Source: Macrostomum lignano | Lineage: Eukaryota | Direction: 5' to 3' | Assembly (NCBI GenBank): GCA_002269645.1 | Contig: NIVC01001918.1 | Span: 62,001 to 126,000, forward strand | DNA length: 64,000 nucleotides | Shown: in pieces, positions 11,201 to 40,400 of the stretch | How the letters are laid out: every line of letters starts with the position of its first letter | Position numbering within the stretch: the stretch's first letter is position 1 | Notes under the pieces: generated by a model | The model's input: the letters and a program-made list of their open reading frames with translations, nothing else | What the model was told of the DNA's origin: nothing | The model's database searches: none | Translations under genes and position numbers: made by a program

Positions 11201-12429
11201 TTCGGCTCCGACGGCCAGCCAGTCGGATGACGCGGAGCTGGCGGCCGCCCACACCAGGCGCAACGTCCTCATCATCGCCGTGCTGGCTGGCGTGTCCGCC
11301 GTCCTCGCCGTCACCCTCATCGTGGCCATCACCTGCGTCAATCAGCCCTGCGGCGACGTTGGCAGCCAACTGACTCGCTTGATGGCTGCCGCAATGCGGC
11401 GGGGTAGGCGACAGCGGCGGCGCCAGAATCAGCGCCTCGGTGGTTCTCGAAAGTTCTCGCAGGCCTCGCTCTCTGAAGCTGGCTGCGGAGGCGGCGGCGG
11501 CAACGGAGGCGCCTCAACTCTCGACGGCCAGATCGACGAGATGTCTGGCCTGCAGCTGACGGACCCGGCCTGGACCACTGGCTTGCCGGACCCTCTGCTG
11601 TGCCGCACTCTTGAGGTAAAATACCCGTGCTGAACTTCTGCTGCTGGAGTCGTGTTTCTATAATCATGCTGAAGCAGCAAGTAAACTTTGCAACCCCGAG
11701 TGTGACAAATGTGATTTCAAACTGAGTACCAAAGAACGTCATATCAGTTACGTTCCATTCATCGTGGAGCTCTGTTCTTCATAAGCAGTCTGCGCCAATC
11801 AAATTTCAGTTAGAAAGTCTCAACTGCCTCATCATTTTCAGTGCCACCGGCAGCTGCTCACGTTGCCCAGCAGCTGCGGCCACCGCTGCCAACAGCAGCG
11901 ACGCTGCCAGCATGTTGACGGCAGTGCCAGCAGTCGCAAACCGCTGCCCAGGCCGGCGTCGGCGGCTTTCGTGCACCAGCAGCCGCACCAGCACCATCCG
12001 GCAGCCAGCAGCTACTGGCTTCAGCAGATTAGCGAGGACTCCGTCAGTCCGCCCTCGGCAGCGGGCACCCTGACGACGTCAACGGACGTCACGGAAGTGT
12101 CCCGGTGTTCCACTAGCGCCGCGGCAGCTGCTGCAATTGACGGCGCCCAGTCTGATAGCGGCCGGGGCTGCTCAGACGAGGATCTATCGTGGCCCCCGGC
12201 TCCGTCCGCTGGCGCCGCGTGCCAGACGACGCTTCAACCGACAGCGGCGCTAAAGGCCGCATTTGGCCGACGGCTTCAGCAGCAGCAGCCGCAGCAGCCG
12301 CAGTCAACCTCGTTGGCGCTTGGCATCGATGGCAGGCAGCTGGCGCAGAATTCGTTGGGTCGGTCGAACTCCGCTGAGCGAGCCTGTCGCCAGATTGACA
12401 CCCTGTTCTTTGGCGATCTCAACACCTGA
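5209..12429 (+). CDS. pcdh: Protocadherin with 7 EC repeats, TM and cytoplasmic DSGRG motif; exons 5209-6108, 8918-9908, 10152-10666, 11178-11615, 11842-12429 (about 1143 aa)
   Basis: Signal peptide and six DxND linkers (DVNDHSP, DDNDNSP, DANDNPP, DLNDNSP, DVNDNAP, DENDSPP). GT-AG joins restore cadherin motifs across junctions (IVVK|LVATDAD, DADEG|VNSQV, ADTA|ILHIDV). TM VLIIAVLAGVSAVLAVTLIVAITCV; tail SQSDSGRGCSDED. Exon lengths sum to 3432 nt, in frame. Confidence 0.9.
6139..6240. repeat. 22-bp repeat (GGGGGCGGAAGTCGGTGGAGAT), pcdh intron 1
   Basis: About 4.5 units, starting about 30 nt after the donor at 6109. Confidence 0.85.
6245..6855. repeat. 23-bp minisatellite (GAGATCAGAGACGGAAGTGAGCT)
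   Basis: About 26 units; shares the CGGAAGT core with the adjacent 22-mer. Confidence 0.95.
8010..8910. repeat. 20-bp minisatellite (CTAAACTCCAATTGCACAAC) abutting the pcdh exon 2 acceptor
   Basis: About 45 units; the last unit reads CTAAACTCCGGTTGCAG|exon. Confidence 0.95.
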
Positions 12430-16900: not shown

Positions 16901-19900
16901 TTTACTTTTTGGAGAGACAGAAGGTAATAGATAAAATGTCATCCATATTTTTCTGTATTTTTCTATGTATATATCTGCTATAATTTGACTTAAATCTTTA
17001 CAAATAGAGCCTATATATTCACTTTCATTCTGCAATCATTTAAATATAGAAATTGTATTAAAATGGTTGTAGGAAAAAAGTAAGGAAGATCTATTTTGTT
17101 TTATAATCATCTATATTGTATAAAATCACATGTAAGGGATTATAGTATAAAAAATAAAGTTGAATGTAATTTGCAAAGTAACAAATTTTAGTTAGTCATT
17201 CTAGAGACAAAGTCCCAAGTAATGTCAGAATATCAAAACTAAATGTATAGGCTTATGTTCATATTTGATTTTCAGCATGTTTTGTACAGAGATGCATGCT
17301 TTCCTTCATGTTCATCTTATGATACCTTCAATAGAAATTAAATATATTCTATAATTAGATAGAGTTTTATGATGAAAGTAATAGGTGGCACACATGTTTA
17401 CACAAAAATATGTAGAAAAATAAACATGGCATAAAGCATGTGTTAAATTTGACTAAATTTGACTGACTGAAATTTGTTTGCTCAAAAACTGCATTCTTTT
17501 TTTTACTTTTGTACTACTATTGCCTACATGTAATTTTACCATTGAGGTAATAGAAAATAAAATAGATATCTTTTACTTTCATCTTACAATCATTTATATA
17601 CAATCTCTCCATTTAAATGATCAAACAAAAGTAAATTTATAGGCCCCCATTCTTGGTTTTGCTGTTTTTTTGTTTGATTGTGATTCTTAAAGTGAAAATA
17701 TGGAACAAAAAACAATTATTATATGATAATCTTTTGATAAACTATAGATAAACTTTGATAACTTGATAAACTCACAGACATCTTGAATCAATATTTTTAT
17801 TTTTATTCAATATTAATATTATTGTTTTTGCTATTATTGTCACTTGCAACAAAGCAAAGTTCAACATAATATATTCATATGTTGATCAAGCCTTGAAATA
17901 GTTGAATATATGTGTATAAATGAGCATACTTAAAAATTATAGTTACATTTCTTTTGAATATCAAAAATGGTTTCTTTAAAATAAATATATTTTTTGCTGA
18001 TTAACTAAGTACAAGTATAATAAAACCTGGCAGAATGTAAAGCAGTTTAAAAAAGTACAAATGTCAGTTTCTTCTTAAATTTTTTTCAACACTTTAGTTA
18101 AAAAAATTCTTATCTAACTTTTCATTTAATTATAAGTAGCTTGTACTTATAAGTAATCAGAGCTAGGCTAGTCTGGGTTGAATGCTGTGTAGGAGCACAC
18201 AGTACTTTATGCTTAAAAATCAAAAAATGAACTCACCATAAATGCAGCTGACTATCGCTCTCCATTCCCAAACCAGAACTTAACCATGCACTGTGTTGCT
18301 AATGGAGACCCAAGCAAGCCTCTGCTACTTCTGCTGCACGGATTTCCTGAATTTTGGTTCAGCTGGCGGCATCAGCTGAACAGCGAATTGGCAAAACATT
18401 TCAGGCAAGTCTCATTGCTGACCCTAACCACCTTATCGTGACGCTTTGGGTAAACGGTGGGAGTAACTATGACACTATTAAAATAACATAAATGCCTCGT
18501 CGTCTTATTAGTGCTTAGTAAATATATTTAACAGGAATTTCACTTGTCACACTGAGCCATTATCTGCATATATATTCTCATTGGACAATATTCTAACTCC
18601 ATTTCAGGGTTGTGGCTGTAGACATGCGTGGCTACGGAGACACCGATAAACCCACAGGTATAGAGCGATATCGCATGGTTCATTTAGTGGACGATGTTCG
18701 GCAAGCCATTCTGGCTCTGGGTGAGTTGTGCGAAACTTTATTGACAATAATCTCTGACTGCTACTTCTAATGTTTACCAAACTTTGTTGACAAGCATCTG
18801 GAAATCTCCCAGATTGGGGATCAGCATCTGGAAATCTCCCAGATTGGGATCTGCATCTGGAAATCTCCCAGATTGGGGATCAGCAACTGGAATTCTCCCA
18901 AATTGGGGATCTGCATCTGGAATTCTCCCAAATTGGGTATCTGCATTTGGAATTCTCCCAAATTGGGTATCTGCGTCTGGAATTCTCCCAAATTGGGTAT
19001 CTGCAACTGGAATTCTCCCAAATTGGGGATCTGCATCTGGAATTCTCCCAAATTGGGTATCTGCGTCTGGAATTCTCCCAAATTGGGGATCTGCAACTGG
19101 AATTCTCCCAAATTGGGGATCTGCATCTGGAATTCTCCCAAATTTGGGATCTGCAACTGGAATTCTCCCAAATTAGGAACAGCATCTGGAATTCTCCCAA
19201 ATTGGGGATCAGGATCTGGAAATCTCCCAAATTGGGGATCAGGATCTGGAAATCTCCCAGATTGGGGAGCAGCATCTGGAAATCTCTCAAATTGGGGAGC
19301 AGCATCTGGAAATCTCTCAAATTGGGGAGCAGCATCTGGAAATCTCCCAAATTGGGGATCAGCATCTGGAAATCTCCCAGATTGGGGAGCAGAATTTAGA
19401 AATCTCCCAGCAGCGCAATGGGATCTCCAATACGCCGTTCCCAGGCTACACCCGGTGCCACCTGGTCGGTCACGATGTCGGTGGCGCGGTGGCCTGGTCC
19501 CTGGCCGCGGCCCGGCCCGCCATGGTTGACCGCCTGGTGCTGCTGAACGCGCCGCACCCGCTGGCCTATCACACCTGCCTGCGCAGCACCCGGTCGCAGT
19601 TCTTCCGCGCCTGGCACCTGTTCTTCTTCCAGCTGCCCCGGCTGCCCGAGTGGCTGGTTGGCCGTCAGGACTTGGCCGCTCTGGCCGACTCGCTCACCGG
19701 CAAGAGCCAGGGGGTCAAGCGCGGTGCCGTCTGCAATGATGAGCTCGAAGCTTATAAGTTTATGTTCAGCGCTCCAGGTGAGTGCCCCTGCTGCTTGTCT
19801 CACTGTGCTTCTCTCTGTTGTCTCACTCTGCTTCTCTCTGTTGTCTCACTGTGCTTCTCTGTTGTCTCACTGTGCTTCTCTCTGTTGTCTCACTCTGCTT

Positions 19901-20926
19901 CTCTCTGTTGTCTCACTGTGCTTCTGTCTGTTGTCTCACTGTGCTTCTCTCTGTTGTCTCACTCTGCTTCTCTCTGTTGTCTCACTGTGCTTCTCTGTTG
20001 TCTCACTGTGCTTCTCTCTGTTGTCTCACTCTGCTTCTCTCTGTTGTCTCACTGTGCTTCTGTCTGTTGTCTCACTGTGCTTCTCTCTGTTGTCTCACTG
20101 TGCTTCTCTCTGTTGTCTCACTCTGCTTCTCTCTGTTGTCTCACTGTGCTTCTCTCTGTTGTCTCACTCTGCTTCTCTCTGTTGTCTCACTGTGCTTCTG
20201 TCTGTTGTCTCACTGTGCTTCTCTCTGTTGTCTCACTGTGCTTCTCTCTGTTGTCTCACTGTGCTTCTCTGTTGTCTCACTGTGCTTCTCTGTTGTCTCA
20301 CTGTGCTTCTCTCTGTTGTCTCACTGTGCTTCTCTCTGTTGTCTCACTGTGCTTCTCTCTGTTGTCTCACTCTGCTTCTCTGTTGTCTCACTGTGCTTCT
20401 CTCTGTTGTCTCACTGTGCTTCTCTCTGTTGTCTCACTGTGATTCTCTCTGTTGTCTCACTCTGCTTCTCTCTGTTGTCTCACTGTGCTTCTCTGTTGTC
20501 TCACTGTGCTTCTCTGTTGTCTCACTCTGCTTCTGTTATCCCACCCTACTTATTTTTTCTCTCTAAATCTTTCTCTCACCTCACTACGCTCCTGGCCCCG
20601 CAGGCGCCCTGACTGGCCCCATCAACTACTTCCGGGCCAGCCTCCGCTACCCAGACGACAAATTCGAGCTTGAGGGCCGCCGACGACCGCCAATCGGCCA
20701 GCCGACTCTGCTGGTCTTCGGCTGCCGCGACCGCTTCGTCACGGAGACGGCCGCCCGCCTGTCCGGCCGCTACTGCCGGCCTGGCCGCTTCACCTACCGG
20801 CCCGTGCCAGGGGGCAGCCACTGGCTGCAGCAGGACTGCCCGGACCTGGTCAACCGCCTGCTGCTGGAGCACCTGCTGCCCGCCAACGGCAGGCCGCCTG
20901 CGCTGCTGTCCGAATCGGACGAGTAG
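13917..20926 (+). CDS. EPHX4: Epoxide hydrolase 3/4-like alpha/beta hydrolase; exons 13917-14105, 18277-18404, 18608-18720, 19445-19777, 20604-20926 (about 361 aa)
   Basis: N-terminal membrane anchor ([21 protein letters not shown]). Motifs [33 protein letters not shown], nucleophile elbow [35 protein letters not shown] and GSHWLQQD. Phases 0/2/1/1 are consistent; total 1086 nt. The start codon is less certain, and the symbol is family-level only. Confidence 0.85.
14372..15248. mobile_element. hAT-type MITE (877 bp) in EH intron 1
   Basis: Perfect 8-bp TSD CTCAAGAT (14364-14371 and 15249-15256). TIRs TAGGGATTCC / GGAATGCCTA match 9/10. Dense subterminal AATCCC/GGGATT repeats at both ends; no ORF. 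Confidence 0.88.
15614..16605 (+). mobile_element. Non-autonomous Tc1/mariner derivative with about 198-bp TIRs
   Basis: TA at 15612-13 and 16606-07. Inverted repeats 15614-15811 and 16408-16605 (CGAGGGGTGTCCAAAAAGTAGTGATACTTTTAACC...). Confidence 0.92.
16053..16412 (+). pseudogene. Mariner transposase remnant, N-terminal HTH DNA-binding region only
   Basis: [30 protein letters not shown]...[27 protein letters not shown]...[22 protein letters not shown]. In-frame TAG at 16191-93 where W is expected; no DDD catalytic domain. Confidence 0.85.
18796..19410. repeat. 30-bp minisatellite (GAATTCTCCCAAATTGGGGATCTGCATCTG), EH intron 3
   Basis: About 20 units, each with internal dyad CCCAA-A-TTGGG. 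Confidence 0.95.
19795..20535. repeat. 21/23-bp minisatellite (CTGTTGTCTCACTGTGCTTCTCT), EH intron 4
   Basis: Starts about 17 nt after the donor at 19778. Confidence 0.95.
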
Positions 20927-20929
20927 AGA

Positions 20930-21350
20930 CTAGTCTTTGTCTGAGCATTCCATAGTCTTTGTCTGAGCACGCCTGAGTCTTTGTCTGAGCACCGACTTCT
21001 CGAGTCTTTGACCTTCCAAATCTTTGTCTGACCCGAGTCTTTTTCTTACCCCATGAGTCTTTGTTTGACCTCATAAGTCTTTGTCTAACCTTATGAGTCT
21101 TTTCCTAACCCTATGAGTCCTTGTCAACCCTGTGAGTCTTTTTCTAATCTTACGGGTCCTTGTCTGAACTCATACTTTTTCCTATGAGTCTTTGTTTGAC
21201 CTCATAAGTCTTTGTTCAACCTTGAGTCTTTGTTTGAACTCATGAGTCTTCCTATGAGTCTTTGTTTGACCTCATAAGTCTTTTTCGTACCTCGAGTCTT
21301 TGCCTGACCCTAGGAGTCTTTGTCTAAAACCATGAGTCTTTGTCTGACTC
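20930..21350. repeat. Degenerate ~20-bp repeat (GAGTCTTTGTCTGACC...) just after the EH stop codon
   Basis: Recurrent GAGTCTTT core. Confidence 0.75.
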
Positions 21351-25400: not shown

Positions 25401-28400
25401 GAGAGAAAGGGGGTAGCGGGAGGGTCAGAGAGAGAAAGGGGGTAGCGGAAGGGTCAGAGAGAGAAAGGGGGTAGCGGGAGGGTCAGAGAGGGAGGTAGCG
25501 GGAGGGTCAGAGAGGGAGGTAGCGGGAGGGTCAGAGAGAGGGTTGGTTGAAGGGCCAGGCAGGGGCAGGCGGTGCTATACTAACGCAGTATTTGATTTGC
25601 CTGTATAGACCACAGGATCACAAACAAAGCAAGCAGAAAAAAGCAACCCAGCTTCTCATCCATATTAATTTTTTGCTAAGTCAATAAAAAAACCAATCTG
25701 CACTGCACAAAATTGCTACCAGAGCCACTTTTTCTGTCTCACTGCCTCTTCTTCGCAAGCAAACTAACTGCGGGGTGGCGGAATGGCAGCCTCGGCTTGT
25801 AGCGGGCTGTGCGAACTGCGGTTTCTGCCGTGCTACTGAAGGGTCAATCGAGCAACTTTCTAGCAAGCCAACTCACTACAGATCTATTCCACTCTTTCAC
25901 CAACCCACACTCCTTTACCAACCCACCCACTCTTTCACCAACCCACACTCCTTTACCAACCCACCCACTCTTTCACCAACCCACACTCCTTTACCAACCC
26001 ACTCACTCTTTCACCAACCCACACTCCTTTACCAACCCACCCACTCTTTCACCAACCCACACTCCTTTACCAACCCAACCACTCTTTCACCAACCCACAC
26101 TCCTCTACCAACCCACCCACTCTTTCACCAACCCACCCGCTCTTTCACCAACCCACCCGCTCTTTCACCAACCCAACCACTCCTCTACCAACCCACCCAT
26201 TCTTCCACCAACCCACCCACTCCTTCACCAACCCACCCACTCCTTCACCAACCCACCCACTCCTTCAGTGAGCATACTTTAAGCATCTCAAAAGTCCCAA
26301 TCGAGAACAGCAAAGGCGGCGGGACTCACTGCAATGGACTCGTAACTGCAGTTCATCATAGCGATAAGCATGTTCAGCAGCACAACAAACGTTATCGCTG
26401 AGAAGACGCCGTACATGAGCTTGCCTGAAATTTCGAAGATTAGTTTTAAAATGATTACGTAATCCAGTTTTATTCATTCTGTATCTCAGCTGTTGCAAAA
26501 TGAACCCAAGGCATCCAAAATCTCAGTTCTTGGGGTTAAAATGTTTTGCTTCATTGCTTCAGTCTCCCTCTCTCTCTGCCCCTTATCTATCTGGCACTGG
26601 AAACCCAAAGCGAACTGGGGTGGCTGGGGTGCTAGCATGAAAATTTCGCCATTTCAACACCGAATAATACGGCTACACCCCCCCCTACAGCCTAGCGCCA
26701 GCGGCCATATTAGTTGGAAATTAGATAAATACACAGATATCAACCAGCGGAAAAGGAAAACTGGTCTTGAAAGAAGCCAACAAGAAATTTCCTCTAGTAG
26801 ATTATATTTTAATAATTTCCTTGTGCGAGCATTTTCTTCAGCGCGTAGAGAATCGGGAGTTGTTTGGTTTCAATATTTTTCCTGACTCTCAGAGATGCCT
26901 TCTGTCTGCCTCGGCTGTCTGTCTGTTCTGGCCGTTGCGACCTTCATCGCACCGCACCTGCAGCTCACTGCAGCGGTGAGTTTATGGCTGTGGTTCATAT
27001 TGACAGCCTGTTTATTATACCTGGGGTTAAAGCAGAGATTTAGAATGGATTGCTAGTCTATAGCTTACATGGATAAAGGATTAGAATGGATTGCTAATCT
27101 ATAGCCTACATGGATAAAGGATTAGAATGGATTGCTAATCTATAGCCTACTTGGATAAAGGATTAGAATGGATTGCTAATCTATAGCCTACACGGATGTA
27201 GGAATAGAATGGATTGCTAATCTATAGCCCACATGGATAAATGATTAGAATGGATTGCTAATCTATAGCCTACATGGATAAAGGAATAGAATGGATTGCT
27301 AATCTATAGCCTACACGGATGTAGGAATAGAATGGATTGCTAATCTATAGCCTACACGGATGTAGGAATAGAATGGATTGCTAATCTATAGCCTACATGG
27401 ATGTAGGAATAGAATGGATCGCTAATCTATTTGCCTACATGGATAAAGGATTAGAATGGATTGCTAATCTATTTGCCTACATGGATAAAGGATTAGAATG
27501 GATTGCTAATCTATAGCCTACATGGATAAAGGATTAGAATGGATTGCTAATCTATAGCCTACATAGATAAAGGATTAGAATGGATTGCTAATCTATAGCC
27601 TACATGGATAAAGGATTAGAATGGATTGCTAATCTATAGCCTAAATGGATAAAGGATTAGAATGAATTGCTAATCTATAGCCTACATGGATAAAGGATTA
27701 GAATGAATTGCTAATCTATAGCCTACATGGATAAAGGATTAGAATGGATTGCTAATCTATAGCTTACGTGGATAAAGGATTAGAATGGATTGCTAATCTA
27801 TAGCCTACATGGATAAAGGATTAGAATGAATTGCTAATCTATAGCCTACATGGATAAAGGATTAGAATGGATTGCTAATCTACTTCCCGCTGACATTCGA
27901 ACAGAACACAAAGTTCTTTGTGCGGCTGGACCACTATGAGAACTACAATAACCAGCTGCAAGTTCATGCCCGGTGCGACAGCGGCAACGTCTGCGACCCC
28001 CTATTTGTCATTCGAGTCAGCGGAAGCTGGTGAGAATGCAACCTGTCTACTTTCAGTAGGAAGTGTGCAAATGTGTTCAAAATTTATAAGAATCATTTAT
28101 TGTGTAGAAGTAATAAAAAATTAATAGCATATTACAAGAATCTTTTATACAAAAAAAGAGAATCGCTTCTATAGGAATCTCACCCAAGAGAATCGCCCCT
28201 ATAAGAATCTCACCCAAGAGAATCGCTTCTATAGAAATCTCACCCAAGAGAATCGCCCCTATAAGAATCTCACCCAAGAGAATCGCCCCTATGAGAATCT
28301 CACCCAAAAGAATCGCCCCTATAAGAATCTCACCCAAGAGAATCGCCCCTATGAGAATCTCACCCAAGAGAATCGCCCCTATAAGAATCTCACCCAAGAG

Positions 28401-31400
28401 AATCGCCCCTATGAGAATCTCACCCAAGAGAATCGCCCCTATAAGAATCTCAACCAAGAGAAGTACCCCTATAAGAATCTCACCCAAGAGAATCGCCCCT
28501 ATAAGAATCTCACCCAAGAGAATCACCCCTATAAGAATCTCACTCAAGAGAATCGCCCCTATAAGAATCTCACCCAAGAGAATCGCCCCTATAAGAATCT
28601 CACCCAAGAGAATCACCCCTATAAGAATCTCACCCAAGAGAATCGCCCCTATAAGAATCTCACCCAAGAGAATCGCCCCTATAAGAATCTCACCCAAGAG
28701 AATCACCCCTATAAGAATCTCACCCAAGAGAATCGCCCCTATAAGAATCTCACCCAAGAGAATCGCCCCTATAAGAATCTCACCCTAAACTTGATCCTCA
28801 AGGGGCCAGAGCGACGCGGCATCGGACTGCATCTCCAACAAAATGCAGATCACATTCGGTGATAAAATTGGTACAAATCTGACCAATCCGCTGCATTTCG
28901 TTGAGCAACCATCTCTGGTAATAAATCAATTCATAATTCATCTCGATAAAAACACAGTACAATATGACTTTTGATATTTTCCTAATTGTTTCAGCATCCA
29001 GTGTTAATTCATGTCTGGATCAAGGACTGCTACATGGACAGAGCCATGGACGACATTGGCGAGTTTCACGCGCAAATAGCGCAGCTTCCCAGACCATTTT
29101 TATTCACGGATCGGGTCGACTTTAGCGACTCGGAGCGAACGAAATCGATCGAATTGACGCCATCGTTAAACACCCCGCTATCGACCAAGTGAGCCTTGAG
29201 CTGGTGCTACTTACCTGTGTTCGAGTCGGTTTATTGGTTTATCAGTTGATAATTTGATGAGTTTATCATTCTATCAGCTTATCAGTTTATCAGCTTATCA
29301 GTTTATCAGCTTATCAGTTTATCAGCTTATCAGTTTATCAGTTTATCAGCTTATCAGGTTATCAGTTTATCAGTTTATCAGCTTATCAGTTTATCAGCTT
29401 ATCAGTTTATCAGCTTATCAGTTTATCAGCTTATCAGGTTATCAGGTTATCAGTTTATCAGCTTATCAGTTTATCAGCTTATCAGTTTATCAGCTTATCA
29501 GGTTATCAGCTTATCAGTTTATCAGCTTATCAGTTTATCAGTTTATCAGCTTATCAGGTTATCAGTTTATCAGTTTATCAGCTTATCAGTTTATCAGTTT
29601 ATCAGTTTATCAGTTTATCAGCTTATCAGTTTATCAGCTTATCAGTTTATCAGTTTATCAGCTTATCAGCTTATCGACTTGATAAACCGACTGCTTCACC
29701 CCCTCAGGCTGCGAGTCACAGTATGGCGCCAATGTGAGCAGTTTTATTACGGCCAGGATTGCTCAAAATTCTGCCGACCCCTGCCGGGCCTGAGCTGCCA
29801 CCCGGAGACTGGGGAGATGCTGAACTGCAGGGGATCCGTGTGCAACACCGGGATGGCAGCGCCCGCCACTTCTGGGCCCGCTGCAGCTCAGCAAACTGCT
29901 GAACCAGTGGGTGTCGCTGTGCAGTCCAACGTTAAAAAGCAGAAGGTGCTGCTTCATACCGTTTCATTTTTTATGGACTGGGATTGACGGATAGAGTGAC
30001 AGCTAGAGTGACAGTTTGAGTGAAACTTAGTTGATGGTTAGAGTGAATCTAGAAAGACCAATAGAGTGAATCTAGAATGACCAATAGAGTGAATCTAGAT
30101 TGACAGATAGAGTGACAGATAGAGTGACAGCTAGAGTGACAGCTAGAGTGACAGCTAAAGTGACAGATAGAGAGTGACAGATAGAGAGTGACAGCTAGAG
30201 TGACAGCTAGAGTGACAGATAGAGTGACAGCTAGAGTGCTTTGGCCGATCAGGTGAAGCTAGCATGGCAGACTAAAAAGAAGCCCTCTCGAGTGCCGAAT
30301 GCGGTGAAGAAGGTATTGAAGAACTTTATTGAAATCCGCAGGCGCAGCAGGCCAATCTGACCCTGATAGTCACGCTGTCATGCTTGCTGGCCCTGACTAC
30401 AGTCGCCGCTGCCTCCATTCTAGTCATCGTGCGCCGGTGTGTAAGGCCAAAAAAGTGAGTTGCCTCATACAGTTTGCTTTCGGTTGCTAATGGGTTCCAG
30501 TTATTATCACAAGTAGTGAGTTGGCTGCAGGAGGGACTTGGGAAACAGGGAGTGAGGTGGCTGCAGGAGGGGTTGGAGTAAACAGGGAGTGAGGTGGCTG
30601 CAGGAGGGGTTGGAGTAAACAGGGAGTGAGGTGGCTGCAGGAGGGGTTGGAGTAAACAGGGAGTGAGGTGGCTGCAGGAGGGGTTGGAGTAAACAGGTAG
30701 TGAGGTGGCTGCAGGAGGGGTTGGAGTAAACAGGGAGTGAGGTGGCTGCAGGAGGGGTTGGAGTAAACAGGGAGTGAGGTGGCTGCAGGAGGGGTTGGAG
30801 TAAACAGGGAGTGAGGTGGCTGCAGGAGGGGTTGGAGTAAACAGGGAGTGAGGTGGCTGCAGGAGAGGTTGGAGTAAACAGGGAGTGAGGTGGCTGCAGG
30901 AGGGGTTGGAGTAAACAGGGAATGAGGTGGGTGAAGGAGGGTTTGGAGGAACAGGGAATGAGGTGGGTGAAGGAGGGTTTGGAGGAACAGGGAGTGAGGT
31001 GGGTGCATGAAGGGGTTGGAGGAACAGGTAGTGAGGTGGGTGCAGGAGGCGGTTGTAAGTTTTGCTCAGTCAGGCCCTAAGCTGGTCGAAGACCCCGTAC
31101 AGTCTGTCTCTCTCCCCCACAAGGCGACCGCGCTGTCATAACCAGGCCCTGATCCCGCCCACGCACTCGATGGCTGTCGGCCTGCGAGACGCCGAGGCGG
31201 GCTCCGACCCGGCCTCTCCGCTGCAGCAGGACTTTGTCAACGGCTGCTACACCGTCCAGACGAGGCCGCTGCCGGCTCCCGGTGGCGTTGTCACTGCCAC
31301 TGCCGTCGCCAGGGAGGCGCACCGGCCAGAATCGGACGTGTACGAAACCCCGGAGGAGCCGGCGCTGCCGCCCGGCGTGGCCGTTCCGCCGCCGCTGCCG

Positions 31401-34400
31401 GCCAGGGACAACCTGTTTGGGCAGTTCCAGCGAACTCCGCTATCAAGAAGCTTCAGCAAGCCGAATAAGTGATTGATGGAGATCTGGCAGACCGGCTGCT
31501 GAATCGGCTCGCTCGCATTGCATCATATTAGCGCTTCATTCAAAGTTCGCGATGTACTTTTATGCTCACATTGCATTGGGTGAATATTAGCTCTTAATTC
31601 AAAGATCACAATGTACTTTTATTCTGGCATTGCATTGGATGAATATTAGCGCTTCATTCAAAGATCACGATGTACTTTTATTCTGGCATTGCATGGGATG
31701 AATATTAGCGCTTAATTCAAAGATCGCAATGCGCTTTTCAAAGTTCACTTTAAATTTCGGCCTTCAAATTCTATTTGCTGACAAATTGCTCATATTGATC
31801 ATTGACCTTAGTCAATAAAAATTAGTTGGCCATTTTTTGTCAAAGTTGACTACTTTGTCTCGATTGTACTCTGAGTAGTCTGTTTATTTCATTCCATTCT
31901 TTCATGTCAGCATTCGCCCCAGTAGTTAGTCGGTATGGTATATGGACGTTGAAATATTAAAACGAATTTGATTGTTAACAAACCTATGTACATATTCGAT
32001 AATGATTTAAATTTACAGATTTTTAACACCTTTTTCAGATTCTCACAAACTTAAACGAGTTTGATATCAATAAGCTGTATTCTGTTGAGTAAGTAAAGCT
32101 TGGTTGCAGCTGTGAGAACTCCTTTCGATAACTGAATCCATAAAAATAATAAAAAATTAAATCTGTTTATCAATGCAGGAAATGTGTTTATCTATTGTTA
32201 TTCTTAATATTCTGTCAATAAATCTGCTATGTGCATATTGCAATATTTTAAATGCAATTTTTGTTTATAGATGCGTGCAGTGTTTAATGCAACCTCATAT
32301 GCCATCGATTGTACTTTTTTGTTTGTTAAAAGTAAAAAAACTTTTTGTCATTTGTGTTGCCCAAGTTAAAGATTAGCAATCCATTCTAATCCTTTATCCA
32401 TGAAGGCTATAGATTAGCAATCCATTCTAATCCTTTATCCATGAAGGCTATAGATTAGCAATCCATTCTAATCCTTTATCCATGAAGGCTATAGATTAGC
32501 AATCCATTCTAATCCTTTATCCATGTAGGCTATAGATTAGCAATCCATTCTAATCCTTTATCCATGTAGGCTATAGATTAGCAATCCATTCTAATCCTTT
32601 ATTCACGTAAGCTATAGATTAGAAATCCATTCTAATCCTTTATCCACGTAAGCTATAGATTAGCAATCCATTCTATTCGTTTATTCATGTAGACTATAGA
32701 TTAGCAATCCATTCTATTCCTACATTCATGTAGGCTATAGATTAGCAATCCATTATGTCCTGAAACTATGACGGCTATACATGACTGATTCAAAATTGCA
32801 CTTCTGAGTACATGAGTACAAAAAACAAAGGAAATCTGATAGACGGACTCACCGACAAACTCCGTGAAGGAATGCTCATACTCCAGATCCGTGTTGGATA
32901 AGTCAATGAGGCCGTAGGTGGACCAATACAGAGTCTGGGTGATCTCGAACAAGCTGCGGCATGGACAGAGGTGGGTCAAAAACAGTATTTTAACACTCAT
33001 CATGCACTACTGTTAGTAGATGATACTAAATAGTGTCAGAAAGTTCTCAGAATGCTTTCGAAGACACGACTTGAAATCAGATTTGGGGTTTGCCAAAAAT
33101 TCTCGGAGCGCAGCTGATTCTGCAAGAAGATTGTCTGCAGGGGGGGGGGGGCAGAGAGAAGCTGGGAAACGGAGAGATGAAGAGGCCCAGATAAAAGTGG
33201 CTTCTGGGGGCTTCCTCTGTCTTTTCGAAGCCTACCACCTCTCCTTCTCTCCAGAGTCATGGAGACCGGGAACCAGAACCTGGATTAGCGACCCCTTCCT
33301 GAACCTTCATCATTCTAAAGATGGAATTTATTATAACTTTTGGTTTTGTTTAAAACAATTTCTGTAAACTTGGGTCTCATTGTTAAGTCTAGGAGGTGGG
33401 GTCTGCAAACTCCGGCCCGCAGCCTGTGAGCCTCTCTATCCGGCCCTCGGGTCCTTTGAAATTTTACAATAGCAATCCTTCTAAGTCTGGGTTTGTGTGC
33501 TCAAGGTTTGTGTCTCTTCTCAGCTCTCTTATCTCTTATCTCCTCTCCTCTCCTCTCCTCTCCTCTCCTCTCCTCTCCTCTCCTCTCCTCTTCTCTCCTC
33601 TCCTCTCCTCTCCTCTCCTCTCCTCTCCTCTCCTCTCCTCTCCTCTCCTCTCCTCTCCTCTCCTCTCCTCTCCTCTTCTCCCTTCCTCTCCTCTCCTCTC
33701 TCCTCTCCTCTTCTCCCCTCCTCTCTCTCCTCTTCTCCCCTCTCCTCACCTCTCCCCTCCTCTCCTCTTCTCCCTTCCTCTCCTCTCCTCTCTCCTCTCC
33801 TCTTCTCCCCTCCTCTCCTCTCCTCTTCTCCCTCTCCTCACCTCTCCCCTCCTCTCCTCTTCTCCCTTCCTCTCCTCTCCTCTCTCCTCTCCTCTCTCCT
33901 CCTCTCCTCTCCTCTCCTCTCCTCTCCTCTCCTTTCCTCTCCTCTCCTCACCTCTCCTCTCCTCTCCTCTTCTCCCTTCCTCTCCTCTCCTCTCTCCTCT
34001 CCTCTTCTCCCCTCCTCTCCTCTCATCTTCTCCCCTCTCCTCACCTCTCCTCTCCTCTCCTCTTCTCCCTTCCTCTCCTCTCCTCTCTCCTCTCCTCTTC
34101 TCCCCTCCTCTCCTCTCCTCTTCTCCCCTCTCCTCACCTCTCCCCTCCTCTCCTCTTCTCCCTTCCTCTCCTCTCCTCTCTCCTCTCCTCTCTCCTCCTC
34201 TCCTCTCCTCTCCTCTCCTCTCCTTTCCTCTCCTCTCCTCACCTCTCCTCTCCTCTCCTCTTCTCCCTTCCTCTCCTCTCCTCTCTCCTCTCCTCTTCTC
34301 CCCTCCTCTCCTCTCCTCTTCTCCCCTCTCCTCACCTCTCCTCTCCTCTCCTCTTCTCCCTTCCTCTCCTCTCCTCTCTCCTCTCCTCTTCTCCCCTCCT

Positions 34401-37400
34401 CTCCTCTCCTCTTCTCCCCTCTCCTCACCTCTCCCTCCTCTCCTCTTCTCCCTTCCTCTCCTCTCCTCTCTCCTCTCCTCTCTCCTCCTCTCCTCTCCTC
34501 TCCTCTCCTCTCCTTTCCTCTCCTCTCCTCACCTCTCCTCTCCTCTCCTCTTCTCCCTTCCTCTCCTCTCCTCTCTCCTCTCCTCTTCTCCCCTCCTCTC
34601 CTCTCCTCTTCTCCCCTCTCCTCACCTCTCCTCTCCTCTCCTCTTCTCCCTTCCTCTCCTCTCCTCTCTCCTCTCCTCTTCTCCCCTCCTCTCCTCTCCT
34701 CTTCTCCCCTCTCCTCACCTCTCCCCTCCTCTCCTCTTCTCCCTTCCTCTCCTCTCCTCTCTCCTCTCCTCTCTCCTCCTCTCCTCTCCTCTCCTCTCCT
34801 CTCCTTTCCTCTCCTCTCCTCTCCTCTCCTCTCCTCTTCTCCCCTCCTCTCCTCTCCTCTTCTCCCCTCTCCTCACCTCTCCTCTCCTCTCCTCTTCTCC
34901 CTTCCTCTCCTCTCCTCTCTCCTCTCCTCTCTCCTCTCCTCTCCTCTCCTCTCCTCTCCTCTCCTCTCCTCTCCTCTCCTTTCCTCTCCTCTCCTCTCCT
35001 CTCCTCTCCTCTCCTCTTCTCCCCTCCTCTCCTCTCCTCTTCTCCCCTCTCCTCACCTCTCCTCTCCTCTCCTCTTCTCCCTTCCTCCCCTCTCCTCTCT
35101 CCTCTCCTCTTCTCCCCTCCTCTCCTCTCCTCTTCTCCCCTCTCCTCACCTCACCTCTCCTCTCCTCTCCTCTCCTCTCCTCTCCTCTCCTCTCTCCTCC
35201 TCTCCTCTCCTCTCCTCTCCTCTCTCCTCCTCTCCTCTCCTCTCCTCTCCTCTCCTCTCCTCTCTCCTCCTCCCATCCCTGTGCTAGACTCTCGGCACAA
35301 AATTTAAGCAACAACCGTTTGTCGGTACATTAAAGAACTGCGGGCAAACCTGAAACTATCTGAAAATGGGGATTAATTTAGGGAAAAGTGTTTCTTGGCC
35401 TCCATGGCCTGCGGGCTCGCCGGTAAACTTAGAATTTGTCACAGCTTCGATGCATACAGATTTCCCTGCCGTTGGTTGTTTGCAGTGGCCACAGAGGCAG
35501 CCGCAGGCCCCCACTGCAACCACGCGGAACACACGCAGCGCAAGGACCGGGGGTGTTGATAGACAAAAATTTCACTGCCGCAGCCTGCAGAATCTCCTTC
35601 TTTCTCCTCTGCTAGCAGCAGATTTTCAACAAATTCTCTTCCGCTAAACAGCCGCCCAGCTGGACGGGAAAAGTGCTAATCTGTCACGACATTTATGAGA
35701 GCATCATCAATAGCCGAAATGCAAGAATTTGGGAAATTATCCCTCCTTTTTAGATTCCTAATTTGGAAAGTGATTTGCAATACATATCGGAAGTGCCCCA
35801 GGGAAGAGTTTGAGACTTGGAAACCGCTTGGGAACAACGGTGACTGCCAATACTGTTAATAACCTGATGTTCTCTTTTCCAATTGGAGGGAAATTTGTTT
35901 GGTGATTGCGTCTGATGTTTGCACTCTTATTCATCTCCCTCTCCCTCTCCCTCTCCCTCTCCCTCTCCCTCTCCCTCTCCATCTCCCTCTCCATCTCCCT
36001 CTCCCTCTCCCTCTCCCTCTCCATCTCCCTCTCCATCTCCCTCTCCATCTCCCTCTCCATCTCCCTCTCCCTCTCCCTCTCCCTCTCCCTCTCCATCTCC
36101 CTCTCCCTCTCCCTCTCCCTCTCCCTCTCCTCTCCATCTCCCTCTCCATCTCCCTCTCCCTCTCCCTCTCCATCTCCCTCTCCATCTCCCTCTCCCTCTC
36201 CCTCTCCCTCTCCCTCTCCATCTCCCTCTCCCTCTCCTCTCCCTCTCCATCTCCCTCTCCATCTCCCTCTCCCTCTCCCTCTCCCTCTCCATCTCCCTCT
36301 CCATCTCCCTCTCCATCTCCCTCTCCATCTCCCTCTCCCTCTCCCTCTCCCTCTCCCTCTCCATCTCCCTCTCCATCTCCCTCTCCCTCTCCCTCTCCCT
36401 CTCCATCTCCCTCTCCATCTCCCTCTCCCTCTCCCTCTCCCTCTCCATCTCCCTCTCCATCTCCCTCTCCATCTCCCTCTCCATCTCCCTCTCCCTCTCC
36501 CTCTCCATCTCCCTCTCCCTCTCCCTCTCCATCTCCCTCTCCCTCTCCCTCTCCATCTCCCTCTCCATCTCCCTCTCCATCTCCCTCTCCCTCTCCCTCT
36601 CCCTCTCCCTCTCCATCTCCCTCTCCCTCTCCCTCTCCCTCTCCATCTCCCTCTCCATCTCCCTCTCCCTCTCCCTCTCCCTCTCCATCTCCCTCTCCAT
36701 CTCCCTCTCCATCTCCCTCTCCATCTCCCTCCCTCTCCCTCTCCCTCTCCCTCTCCATCTCCCTCTCCATCTCCCTCTCCCTCTCCCTCTCCCTCTCCAT
36801 CTCCCTCTCCATCTCCCTCTCCATCTCCCTCTCCCTCTCCCTCTCCCTCTCCATCTCCCTCTCCATCTCCCTCTCCCTCTCCATCTCCCTCTCCATCTCC
36901 CTCTCCATCTCCCTCTCCATCTCCCTCTCCCTCTCCCTCTCCCTCTCCCTCTCCATCTCCCTCTCCATCTCCCTCTCCCTCTCCCTCTCCCTCTCCATCT
37001 CCCTCTCCATCTCCCTCTCCCTCTCCTCTCTCCCTCTCCATCTCCCTCTCCATCTCCCTCTCCCTCTCCCTCTCCCTCTCCATCTCCCTCTCCATCTCCC
37101 TCTCCATCTCCCTCTCCATCTCCCTCTCCCTCTCCCTCTCCCTCTCCCTCTCCATCTCCCTCTCCATCTCCCTCTCCCTCTCCCTCTCCATCTCCCTCTC
37201 CATCTCCCTCTCCATCTCCCTCTCCCTCTCCCTCTCCCTCTCCTCTCCATCTCCCTCTCCCTCTCCCTCTCCCTCTCCATCTCCCTCTCCATCTCCCTCT
37301 CCCTCTCCCTCTCCCTCTCCATCTCCCTCTCCATCTCCCTCTCCATCTCCCTCTCCATCTCCCTCTCCCTCTCCCTCTCCCTCTCCCTCTCCATCTCCCT

Positions 37401-40400
37401 CTCCATCTCCCTCTCCCTCTCCCTCTCCCTCTCCATCTCCCTCTCCATCTCCCTCTCCATCTCCCTCTCCCTCTCCCTCTCCCTCTCCATCTCCCTCTCC
37501 ATCTCCCTCTCCCTCTCCATCTCCCTCTCCATCTCCCTCTCCATCTCCCTCTCCATCTCCCTCTCCCTCTCCCTCTCCCTCTCCCTCTCCATCTCCCTCT
37601 CCATCTCCCTCTCCCTCTCCCTCTCCCTCTCCATCTCCCTCTCCATCTCCCTCTCCATCTCCCTCTCCCTCTCCCTCTCCCTCTCCATCTCCCTCTCCAT
37701 CTCCCTCTCCATCTCCCTCTCCCTCTCCCTCTCCCTCTCCATCTCCCTCTCCATCTCCCTCTCCCTCTCCCTCTCCCTCTCCATCTCCCTCTCCATCTCC
37801 CTCTCCATCTCCCTCTCCATCTCCCTCTCCCTCTCCCTCTCCCTCTCCCTCTCCATCTCCCTCTCCATCTCCCTCTCCCTCTCCCTCTCCATCTCCCTCT
37901 CCATCTCCCTCTCCATCTCCCTCTCCCTCTCCCTCTCCCTCTCCCTCTCCATCTCCCTCTCCCTCTCCCTCTCCCTCTCCATCTCCCTCTCCATCTCCCT
38001 CTCCATCTCCCTCTCCATCTCCCTCTCCATCTCCCTCTCCATCTCCCTCTCCCTCTCCCTCTCCCTCTCCCTCTCCATCTCCCTCTCCATCTCCCTCTCC
38101 CTCTCCCTCTCCCTCTCCATCTCCCTCTCCATCTCCCTCTCCATCTCCCTCTCCCTCTCCCTCTCCCTCTCCATCTCCCTCTCCATCTCCCTCTCCCTCT
38201 CCCTCTCCCTCTCCATCTCCCTCTCCATCTCCCTCTCCATCTCCCTCTCCCTCTCCCTCTCCCTCTCCCTCTCCATCTCCCTCTCCATCTCCCTCTCCCT
38301 CTCCCTCTCCCTCTCCATCTCCCTCTCCATCTCCCTCTCCATCTCCCTCTCCCTCTCCCTCTCCCTCTCCATCTCCCTCTCCATCTCCCTCTCCCTCTCC
38401 CTCTCCCTCTCCCTCTCCATCTCCCTCTCCATCTCCCTCTCCATCTCCCTCTCCCTCTCCCTCTCCATCTCCCTCTCCCTCTCCCTCTCCCTCTCCATCT
38501 CCCTCTCCCTCTCCCTCTCCATCTCCCTCTCCCTCTACATCTCCCTCTCCCTCTCCCTCTCATCTCCCTCTCCCTCTCCATCTCCCTCTCCCTCTCCCTC
38601 TCCCTCTCCCTCTCCCTCTCCCTCTCCCTCTCCATCTCCCTCTCCCTCTCCCTCTCCATCTCCCTCTCCCTCTCCCTCTCCCTCTCCATCTCCCTCTCCC
38701 TCTCCCTCTCCATCTCCCTCTCCCTCTCCCTCTCCATCTCCCTCTCCCTCTCCCTCTCCCTCTCCCTCTCCCTCTCCCTCTCCCTCTCCATCTCCCTCTC
38801 CCTCTCCCTCTCCATCTCCCTCTCCCTCTCCATCTCCCTCTCCCTCTCCCTCTCCCTCTCCCTCTCCATCTCCCTCTCCACTCCCTCTCCATCTCCCTCT
38901 CCCTCTCCATCTCCCTCTCCATCTCCCTCTCCCTCTCCCTCTCCCTCTCCATCTCCATCTCCCTCTCCCTCTCCATCTCCCTCTCCATCTCCCTCTCCCT
39001 CTCCCTCTCCATCTCCCTCTCCCTCTCCCTCTCCATCTCCCTCTCCCTCTCCCTCTCCATCTCCCTCTCCCTCTCCCTCTCCATCTCCCTCTCCCTCTCC
39101 ATCTCCCTCTCCCTCTCCCTCTCCCTCTCCCTCTCCCTCTCCCTCTCCATCTCCCTCTCCCTCTCCCTCTCCATCTCCCTCTCCCTCTCCCTCTCCCTCT
39201 CCATCTCCCTCTCCCTCTCCCTCTCCATCTCCCTCTCCCTCTCCCTCTCCATCTCCCTCTCCCTCTCCATCTCCCTCTCCCTCTCCATCTCCCTCTCCCT
39301 CTCCATCTCCCTCTCCCACTCCCTCTCCATCTCCCTCTCCCTCTCCATCTCCCTCTCCATCTCCCTCTCCCTCTCCATCTCCCTCTCCCTCTCCATCTCC
39401 CTCTCCCTCTCCATCTCCCTCTCCCTCTCCATCTCCCTCTCCATCTCCCTCTCCATCTCCCTCTCCCTCTCCCTCTCCCTCTCCATCTCCCTCTCCCTCT
39501 CCATCTCCCTCTCCCTCTCCATCTCCCTCTCCCTCTCCCTCTCCATCTCCCTCTCCATCTCCCTCTCCATCTCCCTCTCCCACTCCCTCTACATCTCCCT
39601 CTCCCTCTCCCTCTCCCTCCTTCCCCCTCTCCCCCTCTCTCTCCCTCTCCTTCTCCCCCCTCTCTCCTTTTCCATCTTCCTCTAAATATGAAACCTTCCA
39701 CTTGAAGTGCATTGTAAATTAAATAAATTGTAATTGCACTTAACAGTTATAGCTCATGCTCGTACTTTGCCGATTAGCGTTTCCCTGTTATTTCCCCATT
39801 CATTTATGTCTATGGCTACAACCTTAGAACCCTTGTTATTGCCTTCCCCCGAGCGTGTCTCCTCTCTAAGCAACTCGTCCGCACGAAGCTACTTGTATTG
39901 CGACGCAAGTATAAAGAGTGAAAGATTACGCGACATAGCAATCAAATATAAAGCACAGGATCACAAGACATAACACCACTCCACCTGCATCTTACTCCCC
40001 CCAAGGGCTCACTTTGAGAAGGTGCGGCCTCTCGTGACGCAGTACTGATACTTCTCCAGATCGGAGCCAGTGATGCCGAAGCCCAGTTTCACATCTTTAC
40101 AATACTTGTTCCTCTCGTACGCATAGAACCAATAGAGCTGGTTGAAGCCGCAAGCGAAGCTGCTGAGCACTAGCACAACTACAAATAGAAATTTGAGTAT
40201 GTCCGACAGCATCCGGCCTAATGAGATCTGCAGCGGGCCCAGGTGCGGGTTCACCGTGAAGATGTACACCAATTTGAGCATGGAGAATATGTTGGCCGTG
40301 GCGAACAGGCACTCAGAGATCAGGGTGGGGTCGTACGCGTCCCAGTACTGTCGGTGAATATTAGCCAAGTTGCCGTCCTGCCGCACCTGCCAACGGCCGT

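What the first reader, a model, noticed from the sequence alone, without database searches (positions are those of the whole stretch)
26895..31472. Hidden antisense gene nested in a TRPC intron encodes a minimal, EGF-less Delta/DSL-like protein
Seen: seven short exons, separated mostly by minisatellites, splice with consistent phases into about 404 aa: signal peptide, C2/MNNL-like domain, DSL-like module, Ala/Pro/Thr stalk, TM and tail. The DSL keeps YYG..C..FC.P and six Cys, but its end is compressed (CRGSVC instead of C..GW.G..C), and no EGF repeat follows. Established: canonical Delta/Serrate ligands have C2-DSL-(DOS)-EGF arrays and bind Notch EGF11-12 through C2 and DSL. Inference: a stripped-down ligand, cis-inhibitor or decoy of Notch signalling, embedded antisense in a sensory channel gene so that the two may be mutually exclusive or co-regulated. 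This is the best candidate for an undescribed system here.
Basis: partly seen in the sequence, partly recalled or inferred. Interest (0 to 1): 0.8.

Follow-up and report, generated by a model that had tools for sequence, protein, structure and literature searches.

The report
EGF-less Delta-like gene inside a TRPC intron
This is a real, already-annotated flatworm (Macrostomum lignano) gene for a membrane protein that keeps only the receptor-binding head (C2 + DSL) of a Delta-type Notch ligand and has lost all EGF repeats; it is a modestly interesting lineage-specific variant, not a hidden or new system.

Summary
The seven-exon, 404-aa model on the + strand (26895-31472) is reproduced exactly, with GT..AG at all six introns, five of them filled with minisatellites. 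It is not hidden. The protein is 100% identical to GenBank PAA62582.1 (BOX15_Mlig032942g1, Macrostomum lignano), which UniProt labels 'DSL domain-containing protein'. That annotation is built from RNA-seq.

The domain reading holds: signal peptide, C2/MNNL-like domain, shortened six-Cys DSL, about 39-aa stalk, TM helix, 123-aa tail, no EGF. Pfam alone is weak (DSL 17.2 bits against a cut-off of 24.2; no MNNL hit). Stronger evidence:
- BLASTP to M. lignano's own canonical Delta-like protein (E 1e-16).
- Profile-profile comparison (99.5%, E 3e-23).
- Three intron positions shared with that Delta-like gene.
- An AlphaFold ectodomain model (pLDDT 78) whose best PDB matches are DLL4, Jagged and Delta C2-DSL structures.

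A 41%-identical paralogue (Mlig006308g1) has the same EGF-less architecture, so this is a small family. The gene does lie antisense in a TRPC intron, between the pore and S6 exons. The paralogue is not nested, so nothing supports coupling with the channel.

A Notch-related function is plausible but untested, and most of the conserved DSL Notch-binding face is not kept. Verdict: a new variant of a known kind, of moderate interest.

The parts
26895..26975 (+). Exon 1: start codon and signal peptide (residues 1-27)
   Evidence: splice model; hydrophobic residues 1-24; helix 3-21 in the AF2 model
26976..27904 (+). Intron 1, holding a 41-bp minisatellite array (27040-27882)
   Evidence: Only 476 nt long in homeologue L002
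27905..28029 (+). Exon 2: first part of the C2/MNNL-like domain (residues 28-69; Y38, N40, C51, C57-D58-P59, F61)
   Evidence: Intron position after W69 is shared with the canonical Delta-like gene
28030..28802 (+). Intron 2, holding a 30-bp minisatellite (28156-28785)
28803..28917 (+). Exon 3: C2-like domain, residues 69-107 (ITF, N94 sequon, N97-P98)
   Evidence: Intron position after L107 is shared with the Delta-like gene
28995..29188 (+). Exon 4: end of the C2-like domain, residues 108-172
   Evidence: The intron nine residues before the first DSL cysteine is shared with the Delta-like gene
29189..29707 (+). Intron 4, holding an 8-bp repeat array (29229-29675)
29708..29945 (+). Exon 5: shortened DSL module (C181-C217, spacing C8C3C7C9C4C, YYG, FCRP) and the Ala/Pro-rich stalk (218-251)
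29946..30341 (+). Intron 5, holding a 12-bp repeat. It contains an in-frame pseudo-microexon (30253-30312) that is not conserved
   Evidence: In L002 the acceptor is AT, there is an in-frame TAG and a 2-bp deletion
30342..30454 (+). Exon 6: transmembrane helix (about residues 257-281) and the basic stop-transfer stretch RRCVRPKK
30455..31123 (+). Intron 6, holding a 37-bp minisatellite (30515-31055)
31124..31472 (+). Exon 7: cytoplasmic tail (residues 289-404) with the motifs [10 protein letters not shown] and PPPLPARD, conserved in the paralogue; stop codon
31814..31819 (+). First AATAAA after the stop codon (candidate poly(A) signal). The 3' UTR holds a 59-bp repeat at 31525-31738
   Evidence: Use of this signal was not tested
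32701..33003 (-). Open frame holding the host TRPC exon on the 5' side of the intron that contains the gene (pore-side region; exact exon ends not determined)
26330..26440 (-). Host TRPC S6 exon (..[18 protein letters not shown]..) on the 3' side of that intron (approximate ends)

Best explanation
The locus is an expressed Macrostomum lignano gene for a type I membrane protein. It descends from a Delta-like Notch ligand gene and has kept only the N-terminal C2 (MNNL) domain and a shortened DSL module. These are joined by a short unstructured stalk to a TM helix and a proline/tyrosine-motif tail. All EGF repeats, including the DOS-type EGF1-2, are gone. It belongs to a small Macrostomum family with at least two paralogue groups.

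Shown here: the gene model, the homology and fold of the C2-DSL head, the lack of EGF, purifying selection, and the nesting in a TRPC intron.

Inferred: C2 and DSL are the parts of canonical ligands that touch Notch EGF12 and EGF11. The protein therefore most likely still engages the Notch ectodomain, and membrane lipid through C2, but weakly, because most of the conserved DSL contact face is changed. With only about 39 residues between DSL and membrane, it is better placed to modulate Notch in cis (competition or cis-inhibition) or at very close contacts than to act as a strong trans-activator.

The nesting in TRPC is best read as an incidental intron insertion, not a regulatory device.

My confidence that it is a real EGF-less member of the DSL family is about 0.9. 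My confidence that it acts on Notch at all is about 0.45. The overall figure given combines the two.
For: Gene reality:
- The product is identical to PAA62582.1.
- The Mlig_3_7 annotation is assembled from RNA-seq with StringTie/TACO (PMC5730564).
- Homeologue L002 keeps the ORF and all 12 splice sites. There are 16 synonymous and 13 non-synonymous codon changes (pN/pS about 0.27) and none in the DSL.

Homology:
- BLASTP to the M. lignano Delta-like protein BOX15_Mlig028312g1 covers residues 1-196, 27% identity, E 1e-16.
- An exhaustive HMMER search of 1.84e9 representatives returns only DSL-family proteins, apart from one low-complexity repeat protein (P0008) that matches only the tail. One hit, P0011, has Pfam MNNL 9e-13 plus DSL.
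- hhalign of the EGF-less family against canonical N-termini gives 99.5%, E 3e-23, columns 23-220.
- A profile of the family alone hits Drosophila Delta 7alk at E 2e-4.
- The intron positions after W69, after L107 and nine residues before the first DSL Cys coincide with those of the canonical Delta-like gene and of the paralogue.

Fold: the AF2 ectodomain model has pLDDT 78 and pTM 0.75. Foldseek top hits are DLL4 N-EGF1 bound to Notch1 (4xl1, E 3.5e-8, TMq 0.58), then Jagged1/2, Delta and Serrate C2-DSL.

EGF-less family: paralogue P0017 (421 aa) is 41% identical over the ectodomain, passes the Pfam DSL cut-off (26.7 against 24.2), and has the same layout and tail motifs. No EGF pattern is found in the locus.

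Precedent for function: the APX-1 N-terminus with DSL suffices to activate Notch in C. elegans, and 'DSL-only' ligands may inhibit by competition (PMC2504490).
Against: - Pfam does not call MNNL, and the DSL match is below its cut-off, covering only positions 1-16 of 46.
- The C3-C4 and C5-C6 loops are 4 residues shorter than in Delta, and the GWxG motif is missing.
- The counterparts of Jagged1 R203, D205 and F207, needed for trans-activation and cis-inhibition, are not kept (PMC3415683; alignments).
- The DSL part of the model has pLDDT of only about 55.
- EGF1-2/DOS, important for high-affinity binding in canonical ligands, is absent.
- No binding, expression or phenotype data were found.
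- No orthologue outside M. lignano was found.
Confidence: 0.55

Rival explanations
1. The C2-DSL head has been re-used for a job unrelated to Notch. It would be a lineage-specific adhesion or lipid-sensing receptor that signals through its own tail (a YExP phosphotyrosine-type motif and a PPLPAR proline motif).
For: The canonical Notch-contact residues of the DSL are mostly lost. The best-conserved parts between the two paralogue groups include the tail motifs RP[ED]SxVYExP and PPLPAR. C2 domains of Notch ligands bind phospholipid on their own (PMC3888931 and PMC5538765 abstracts).
Against: A similar proline motif (PPPLPPRP) and NPVY/YxxP motifs also occur in the tail of the canonical M. lignano Delta-like protein. 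The tail is therefore inherited, not a new invention. The only known partner of a C2-DSL unit is Notch.
Confidence: 0.3
2. It is a decaying, truncated duplicate of a Delta-like gene with no function, transcribed only as noise inside the TRPC intron.
For: The DSL is shortened and the EGF repeats are lost. No orthologue was found outside M. lignano. No functional data exist.
Against: Three genomic copies keep the full ORF and all splice sites, with pN/pS about 0.27 and no change in the DSL. A paralogue at only 41% identity keeps the same architecture, all ten ectodomain cysteines and the tail motifs, which needs long-term constraint.
Confidence: 0.07
3. The EGF-less architecture is an artefact of the gene model: EGF exons are missed or lie elsewhere.
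For: Older models of the same loci (P0002, P0005, P0006, P0007, P0016) are clearly mis-spliced.
Against: No EGF-like Cys pattern occurs in any + frame from 26000 to 32700. The DSL exon runs straight into the stalk, and the next exon encodes the TM helix. The independent paralogue model is also EGF-less. The only extra in-frame segment (30253-30312) is broken in the homeologue.
Confidence: 0.05

Closest known systems
Canonical Delta / Delta-like Notch ligands (e.g. M. lignano BOX15_Mlig028312g1; Drosophila Delta, PDB 7alk; human DLL4, PDB 4xl1)
   Same: Signal peptide, N-terminal C2 (MNNL) domain, six-Cys DSL with YYG and FC(R)P, single TM helix, and a cytoplasmic tail with proline motifs. Three intron positions are shared with the M. 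lignano Delta-like gene. The predicted fold superposes on C2-DSL crystal structures.
   Different: No EGF repeats and no DOS motif. The DSL C3-C4 and C5-C6 loops are each 4 residues shorter and lack GWxG. The counterparts of Jagged1 R203, D205 and F207 are lost. Only about 39 residues separate DSL from the membrane.
C. elegans DSL proteins (LAG-2, APX-1, DSL-1 etc.)
   Same: They are divergent DSL ligands that lack the DOS motif. An N-terminus-plus-DSL fragment of APX-1 is sufficient for activity (PMC2504490).
   Different: As the paper describes LAG-2 and APX-1, they still carry EGF repeats after the DSL. This protein has none. There is no evidence here for partner DOS-only proteins in Macrostomum.
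Cnidarian DSL-only and MNNL+DSL genes (Nematostella; Gazave et al. 2009, PMC2770060), and the tandem-DSL protein P0010
   Same: DSL-bearing proteins without EGF repeats. P0010 also has the short-loop DSL variant (xPxPGxxSC).
   Different: Those genes have 1-11 tandem DSL units and no demonstrated TM or tail, and their reality was questioned by the authors. This protein has one C2, one DSL, a TM helix and a tail, and the annotation is RNA-seq based.
Mammalian DLL3
   Same: A divergent ligand with a degenerate DSL. It does not trans-activate but attenuates Notch cell-autonomously (PMC2171428 abstract), which is a functional analogy for the cis-modulator reading.
   Different: DLL3 keeps its EGF repeats. 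It is not specifically related to this protein.

Membership tests
DSL (Delta/Serrate/LAG-2) Notch ligand family | Type I membrane protein: N-terminal signal peptide and a single TM helix | tested here: met
   Hydropathy peaks occur only at residues 1-24 and 254-285, with a basic stretch after the TM helix. The AF2 model has helices at 3-21 and 242-284.
DSL (Delta/Serrate/LAG-2) Notch ligand family | N-terminal C2 / MNNL domain | tested here: met
   Pfam MNNL is not detected directly. Support comes from BLASTP to the Mlig Delta-like protein (residues 1-196, E 1e-16), hhalign at 99.5% over columns 23-220, and an AF2 C2 region with pLDDT 82-94 that matches the DLL4, Jagged and Delta C2 domains.
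DSL (Delta/Serrate/LAG-2) Notch ligand family | DSL domain: about 45 residues, six cysteines, YYG motif (Pfam PF01414) | tested here: inconclusive
   Six Cys, YYG and FCRP are present. Pfam gives 17.2 bits against a cut-off of 24.2 and covers only positions 1-16 of 46. Spacing is C8C3C7C9C4C against C8C3C11C7C8C in Delta. Model pLDDT is about 55 here. Paralogue P0017 passes the cut-off at 26.7 bits. The family profile hits Delta 7alk at E 2e-4.
DSL (Delta/Serrate/LAG-2) Notch ligand family | EGF repeats after the DSL (DOS-type EGF1-2 in most ligands) | tested here: not met
   No EGF family appears in the Pfam scan, and no EGF Cys pattern occurs in any + frame of the locus. Paralogue P0017 also lacks EGF.
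DSL (Delta/Serrate/LAG-2) Notch ligand family | Conserved Notch-binding face of the DSL (Jagged1 F199, R201, R203, D205, F207) | tested here: not met
   F193 and R195 match F199 and R201. The stretch RPRDDxFGH is replaced by RPLPGLS, so R203, D205 and F207 have no counterpart (residue list from PMC3415683).
DSL (Delta/Serrate/LAG-2) Notch ligand family | Binds and regulates a Notch receptor | not testable with these tools
   Needs binding and genetic assays. No literature or expression data were found.
TRPC channels (host gene, - strand) | Ankyrin repeats, TRP_2 domain, six-TM ion-transport domain, TRP box EWKFAR | tested here: met
   Ank_2 6.6e-6, TRP_2 1.1e-29, Ion_trans 3e-8. LLNMLIAM and EWKFAR are present. 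The homeologue host model is 1028 aa with the same domains.

The most novel reading that the evidence does not exclude
Macrostomum flatworms have evolved a dedicated family of minimal 'head-only' Notch ligands (C2-DSL-TM, no EGF). These would act as cell-autonomous cis-inhibitors or competitors of canonical Delta. That would give a natural experiment on what the ligand EGF stalk contributes to force-dependent Notch activation. The copy nested in TRPC might be expressed in, or excluded from, the sensory cells that express the channel.
Probability: 0.25. Interest if true: 0.6.

Novelty: new variant of a known kind. Interest (0 to 1): 0.38.

Why it matters
Notch activation is thought to need a pulling force passed along a long ligand ectodomain, and EGF1-2/DOS contributes to affinity. 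A naturally occurring, selectively maintained ligand relative with only C2 and DSL on a short stalk would be a useful test case. It could show which parts are needed for binding, cis-inhibition and trans-activation, in a flatworm that is transgenic and RNAi-tractable.

The find is limited in three ways. The gene is already in the databases. EGF-less or DOS-less DSL proteins have been noted in cnidarians and nematodes. Nothing here shows that it touches Notch. The nesting inside TRPC is an ordinary gene-in-intron arrangement.

Tried and rejected
1. An eight-exon alternative with an in-frame 60-nt microexon (30253-30312, +20 aa). Rejected: it would leave a 29-nt intron, and in homeologue L002 its acceptor is AT and it carries an in-frame TAG and a 2-bp deletion.
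2. Hidden EGF exons. None were found in any + frame from 26000 to 32700.
3. Direct Pfam assignment. MNNL is not found and DSL is below its cut-off, so profile, gene-structure and fold evidence were needed.
4. Full-length AF2 model. It was poor (pLDDT 41.9). Its Foldseek hits pointed the same way but are not relied on. The ectodomain-only model was used instead.
5. Word-indexed protein searches returned almost nothing beyond M. lignano. The exhaustive HMMER search gave only 8 hits.
6. Older WormBase-type models (P0002 'VASt domain', P0007 and P0016 'CUB domain') are mis-spliced or frameshifted versions of the same genes, and their names are misleading.
7. Expression data. The gene IDs were not found in the main text of any paper, nor in the supplements of three M. 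lignano papers.
8. Conservation of the nesting as evidence of coupling. Rejected: the paralogue has no called gene within 10 kb on either side, so it is not seen to be nested, and the nested copies are recent duplicates.


Full report
ORGANISM AND CONTEXT. The window is eukaryotic and extremely rich in minisatellites. The spliced product of the finding is identical to a Macrostomum lignano protein. The locus is NIVC01001918.1:88895-93472 of assembly GCA_002269645.1, and the fetched locus L001 matches the window base for base over the gene.

CHECK OF THE OBSERVATION. I rebuilt the model from the sequence. The seven + strand exons are 26895-26975, 27905-28029, 28803-28917, 28995-29188, 29708-29945, 30342-30454 and 31124-31472. 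Five of the six introns are mostly tandem arrays with units of 41, 30, 8, 12 and 37 bp. Hydropathy shows a signal-type segment at residues 1-24 and one TM segment at about 257-281, followed by [11 protein letters not shown]. The ectodomain cysteines are at 51, 57, 78 and 119 (C2 part) and at 181, 190, 194, 202, 212 and 217 (DSL part).

IT IS NOT HIDDEN. The protein is 100% identical over 404 of 404 residues to GenBank PAA62582.1 (BOX15_Mlig032942g1), UniProt A0A267EP95, which is named 'DSL domain-containing protein'. Two further genomic copies, PAA70297.1 and PAA81639.1, are 97-98% identical. The Mlig_3_7 annotation was built from RNA-seq with StringTie/TACO and from a de novo transcriptome (PMC5730564). 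The model therefore rests on transcripts, although I could not inspect the reads. No paper mentions these gene IDs.

IS IT UNDER CONSTRAINT? Between the window copy and homeologue L002, all 12 splice dinucleotides and the ORF are kept while intron lengths change (929 against 476 nt for intron 1). There are 16 synonymous and 13 non-synonymous codon differences, giving pN/pS of about 0.27. The DSL has no differences, the C2-like domain has 3 non-synonymous against 6 synonymous, and the tail has 7 against 7. The sample is small, but it fits purifying selection on the ectodomain.

A stronger argument is a diverged paralogue, BOX15_Mlig006308g1 (P0017, 421 aa). It is 41% identical over residues 20-205 (E 4e-50). 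It has the same layout: signal peptide, C2-like domain with the same four cysteines, short six-Cys DSL, a Ser/Thr-rich stalk, a TM helix, and a tail with the same motifs RP[ED]SxVYExP and PPLPAR.

WHAT THE DOMAINS ARE. Pfam on the protein alone is weak. DSL scores 17.2 bits against a cut-off of 24.2 and covers only the first 16 of 46 profile positions, and MNNL gives no hit. phmmer against PDB gives Drosophila Delta at E 0.014. Five independent lines then settle the homology:

- The exhaustive HMMER search of 1.84 billion representatives returns only eight proteins. Apart from one low-complexity repeat protein (P0008) that matches only the cytoplasmic tail, all are DSL-family. They include M. 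lignano's canonical Delta-like protein (residues 5-197, E 1e-5 library-wide) and two metagenomic fragments. One of these fragments has Pfam MNNL at 9e-13 plus DSL.
- BLASTP to the Delta-like protein BOX15_Mlig028312g1 aligns residues 1-196 at 27% identity, E 1e-16.
- hhalign of the EGF-less family (A5) against canonical N-termini (A6) gives 99.5% probability, E 3e-23, over 187 columns spanning both C2 and DSL. The family profile alone hits Delta 7alk at E 2e-4. A mixed profile hits it at 6.6e-15 across positions 29-217.
- Gene structure agrees. The introns after W69, after L107 and nine residues before the first DSL cysteine fall at the aligned positions of introns in the canonical Delta-like gene (after G72, after Q109, at N164) and in the paralogue.
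- An AlphaFold2 model of residues 22-223 has mean pLDDT 78 and pTM 0.75, with 82-94 in the beta-sandwich and about 55 in the DSL. Its best PDB matches are DLL4 N-EGF1 in complex with Notch1 (4xl1, E 3.5e-8, TMq 0.58), Jagged1, Jagged2, Delta and Serrate C2-DSL fragments, followed by generic C2 domains. One caveat applies: the six-sequence alignment contained canonical relatives.

NO EGF. Pfam finds no EGF family. No EGF-type cysteine pattern exists in any + frame of 26000-32700. The DSL exon runs directly into the stalk, and the next exon encodes the TM helix. The only additional in-frame piece (30253-30312) is disrupted in the homeologue. The paralogue model is EGF-less too. The family is therefore truly C2-DSL-stalk-TM-tail.

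HOW CANONICAL IS THE DSL? All six cysteines, YYG and FCRP are present. However, the C3-C4 loop has 7 residues instead of 11, and the C5-C6 loop has 4 instead of 8 and lacks GWxG. Five residues form the conserved Notch-binding face of Jagged1 and are needed for trans-activation and cis-inhibition: F199, R201, R203, D205 and F207 (PMC3415683). Only the first two have counterparts here (F193, R195), and RPRDDxFGH is replaced by RPLPGLS. A similar short-loop variant (xPxPGxxSC) occurs in a tandem-DSL protein from a metagenome (P0010).

HOST GENE AND NESTING. On the - strand lie exons with ankyrin repeats, TRP_2 (1.1e-29, diagnostic of TRPC), Ion_trans, the S6 motif LLNMLIAM (about 26.36-26.38 kb) and the TRP box EWKFAR (about 24.98 kb). 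The public annotation also shows the channel gene spanning the DSL gene. The gene therefore lies antisense inside the intron between the pore-side exon (about 32.7-33.0 kb) and the S6 exon. All copies whose contig reaches far enough are nested, but they are products of the recent genome duplication of M. lignano. The older paralogue occupies 2.2 kb, and no other gene is called within 10 kb on either side of it. I see no evidence that the nesting has regulatory meaning.

MECHANISM (INFERRED). In canonical ligands C2 contacts Notch EGF12 and DSL contacts EGF11, as in the structures matched. An APX-1 N-terminus-plus-DSL fragment is active in C. elegans, and DSL-only ligands were proposed to inhibit by competition (PMC2504490). 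The most likely role is therefore a low-affinity Notch-binding membrane protein acting mainly in cis or at tight contacts. The degenerate DSL face, the missing DOS/EGF1-2 and the 39-residue stalk argue against strong trans-activation.

The conserved tail motifs, a YExP-type tyrosine motif and PPLPAR, suggest adaptor binding or endocytosis. Related proline motifs occur in the canonical Mlig Delta-like tail. A rival reading, in which the scaffold has been re-used for a Notch-independent function, cannot be excluded.

COMPARISON AND NOVELTY. The closest relatives are the Delta-like ligands. The protein fails two family criteria, EGF repeats and the conserved DSL face, and meets the others. Precedents exist for DSL proteins without EGF or DOS: cnidarian DSL-only and MNNL+DSL genes (PMC2770060) and the C. 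elegans DOS-less ligands (PMC2504490). None has this C2-DSL-TM layout described, and none has been studied functionally. I rate it a new variant of a known kind, already present in the databases as an uncharacterised protein, and of moderate interest.

Noticed in passing
window 27040-27882 (+) and 32370-32754 (-); L002 10147-10535 and 15152-15440: The same 41-bp minisatellite forms an array in intron 1 of the DSL gene and a second, inverted array about 900 bp past its stop codon. The two arrays bracket exons 2-7. The inverted pair is also present in the homeologue. Both arrays lie in the same TRPC intron and could pair as a long hairpin in the TRPC pre-mRNA. Origin and meaning are unknown.
   Followed up: partly
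window 33539-39683: About 6 kb of (TCTCCC/TCTCCCTCTCCC)n-type repeat with GC skew near -1 fills the next TRPC intron. Related GA/CT-rich arrays occur at 40571-41215 and 61405-63024.
   Followed up: no
window 74-2350 (+): A 758-aa open frame encodes the end of a reverse transcriptase, then RNase H, an integrase zinc finger and an integrase core. This is an LTR-retrotransposon pol gene cut off by the window start.
   Followed up: partly
window 5209-12429 (+): A multi-exon gene with many cadherin repeats (Pfam Cadherin up to 3e-43), a TM-like segment and a tail, i.e. a protocadherin/FAT-like gene upstream of the TRPC locus.
   Followed up: partly
window about 19400-21000 (+); L001 1-4032: The last exons of an alpha/beta-hydrolase gene (Abhydrolase_1 in the public annotation) lie between the cadherin gene and the 3' end of TRPC. 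One of its introns is a 23-bp minisatellite.
   Followed up: no
window 16194-16412 (+): A short open frame with a helix-turn-helix of the kind found at the N-terminus of transposases (HTH_24, HTH_32) sits in an AT-rich stretch (GC 0.32-0.39). It is probably a DNA-transposon remnant.
   Followed up: no
P0002, P0007, P0016 (UniRef entries of M. lignano): Older gene models of this family are frameshifted or skip exons, and they carry misleading automatic names ('VASt domain-containing', 'CUB domain-containing').
   Followed up: yes
PDB 7dbt / 7dbu against the ectodomain profile and model: The C2-like domain also matches the tardigrade Mn-dependent peroxidase AMNP (profile E 2.6e-6; Foldseek TMt about 0.69). 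AMNP is a secreted C2-type beta-sandwich. This probably reflects a shared fold class rather than shared function.
   Followed up: no
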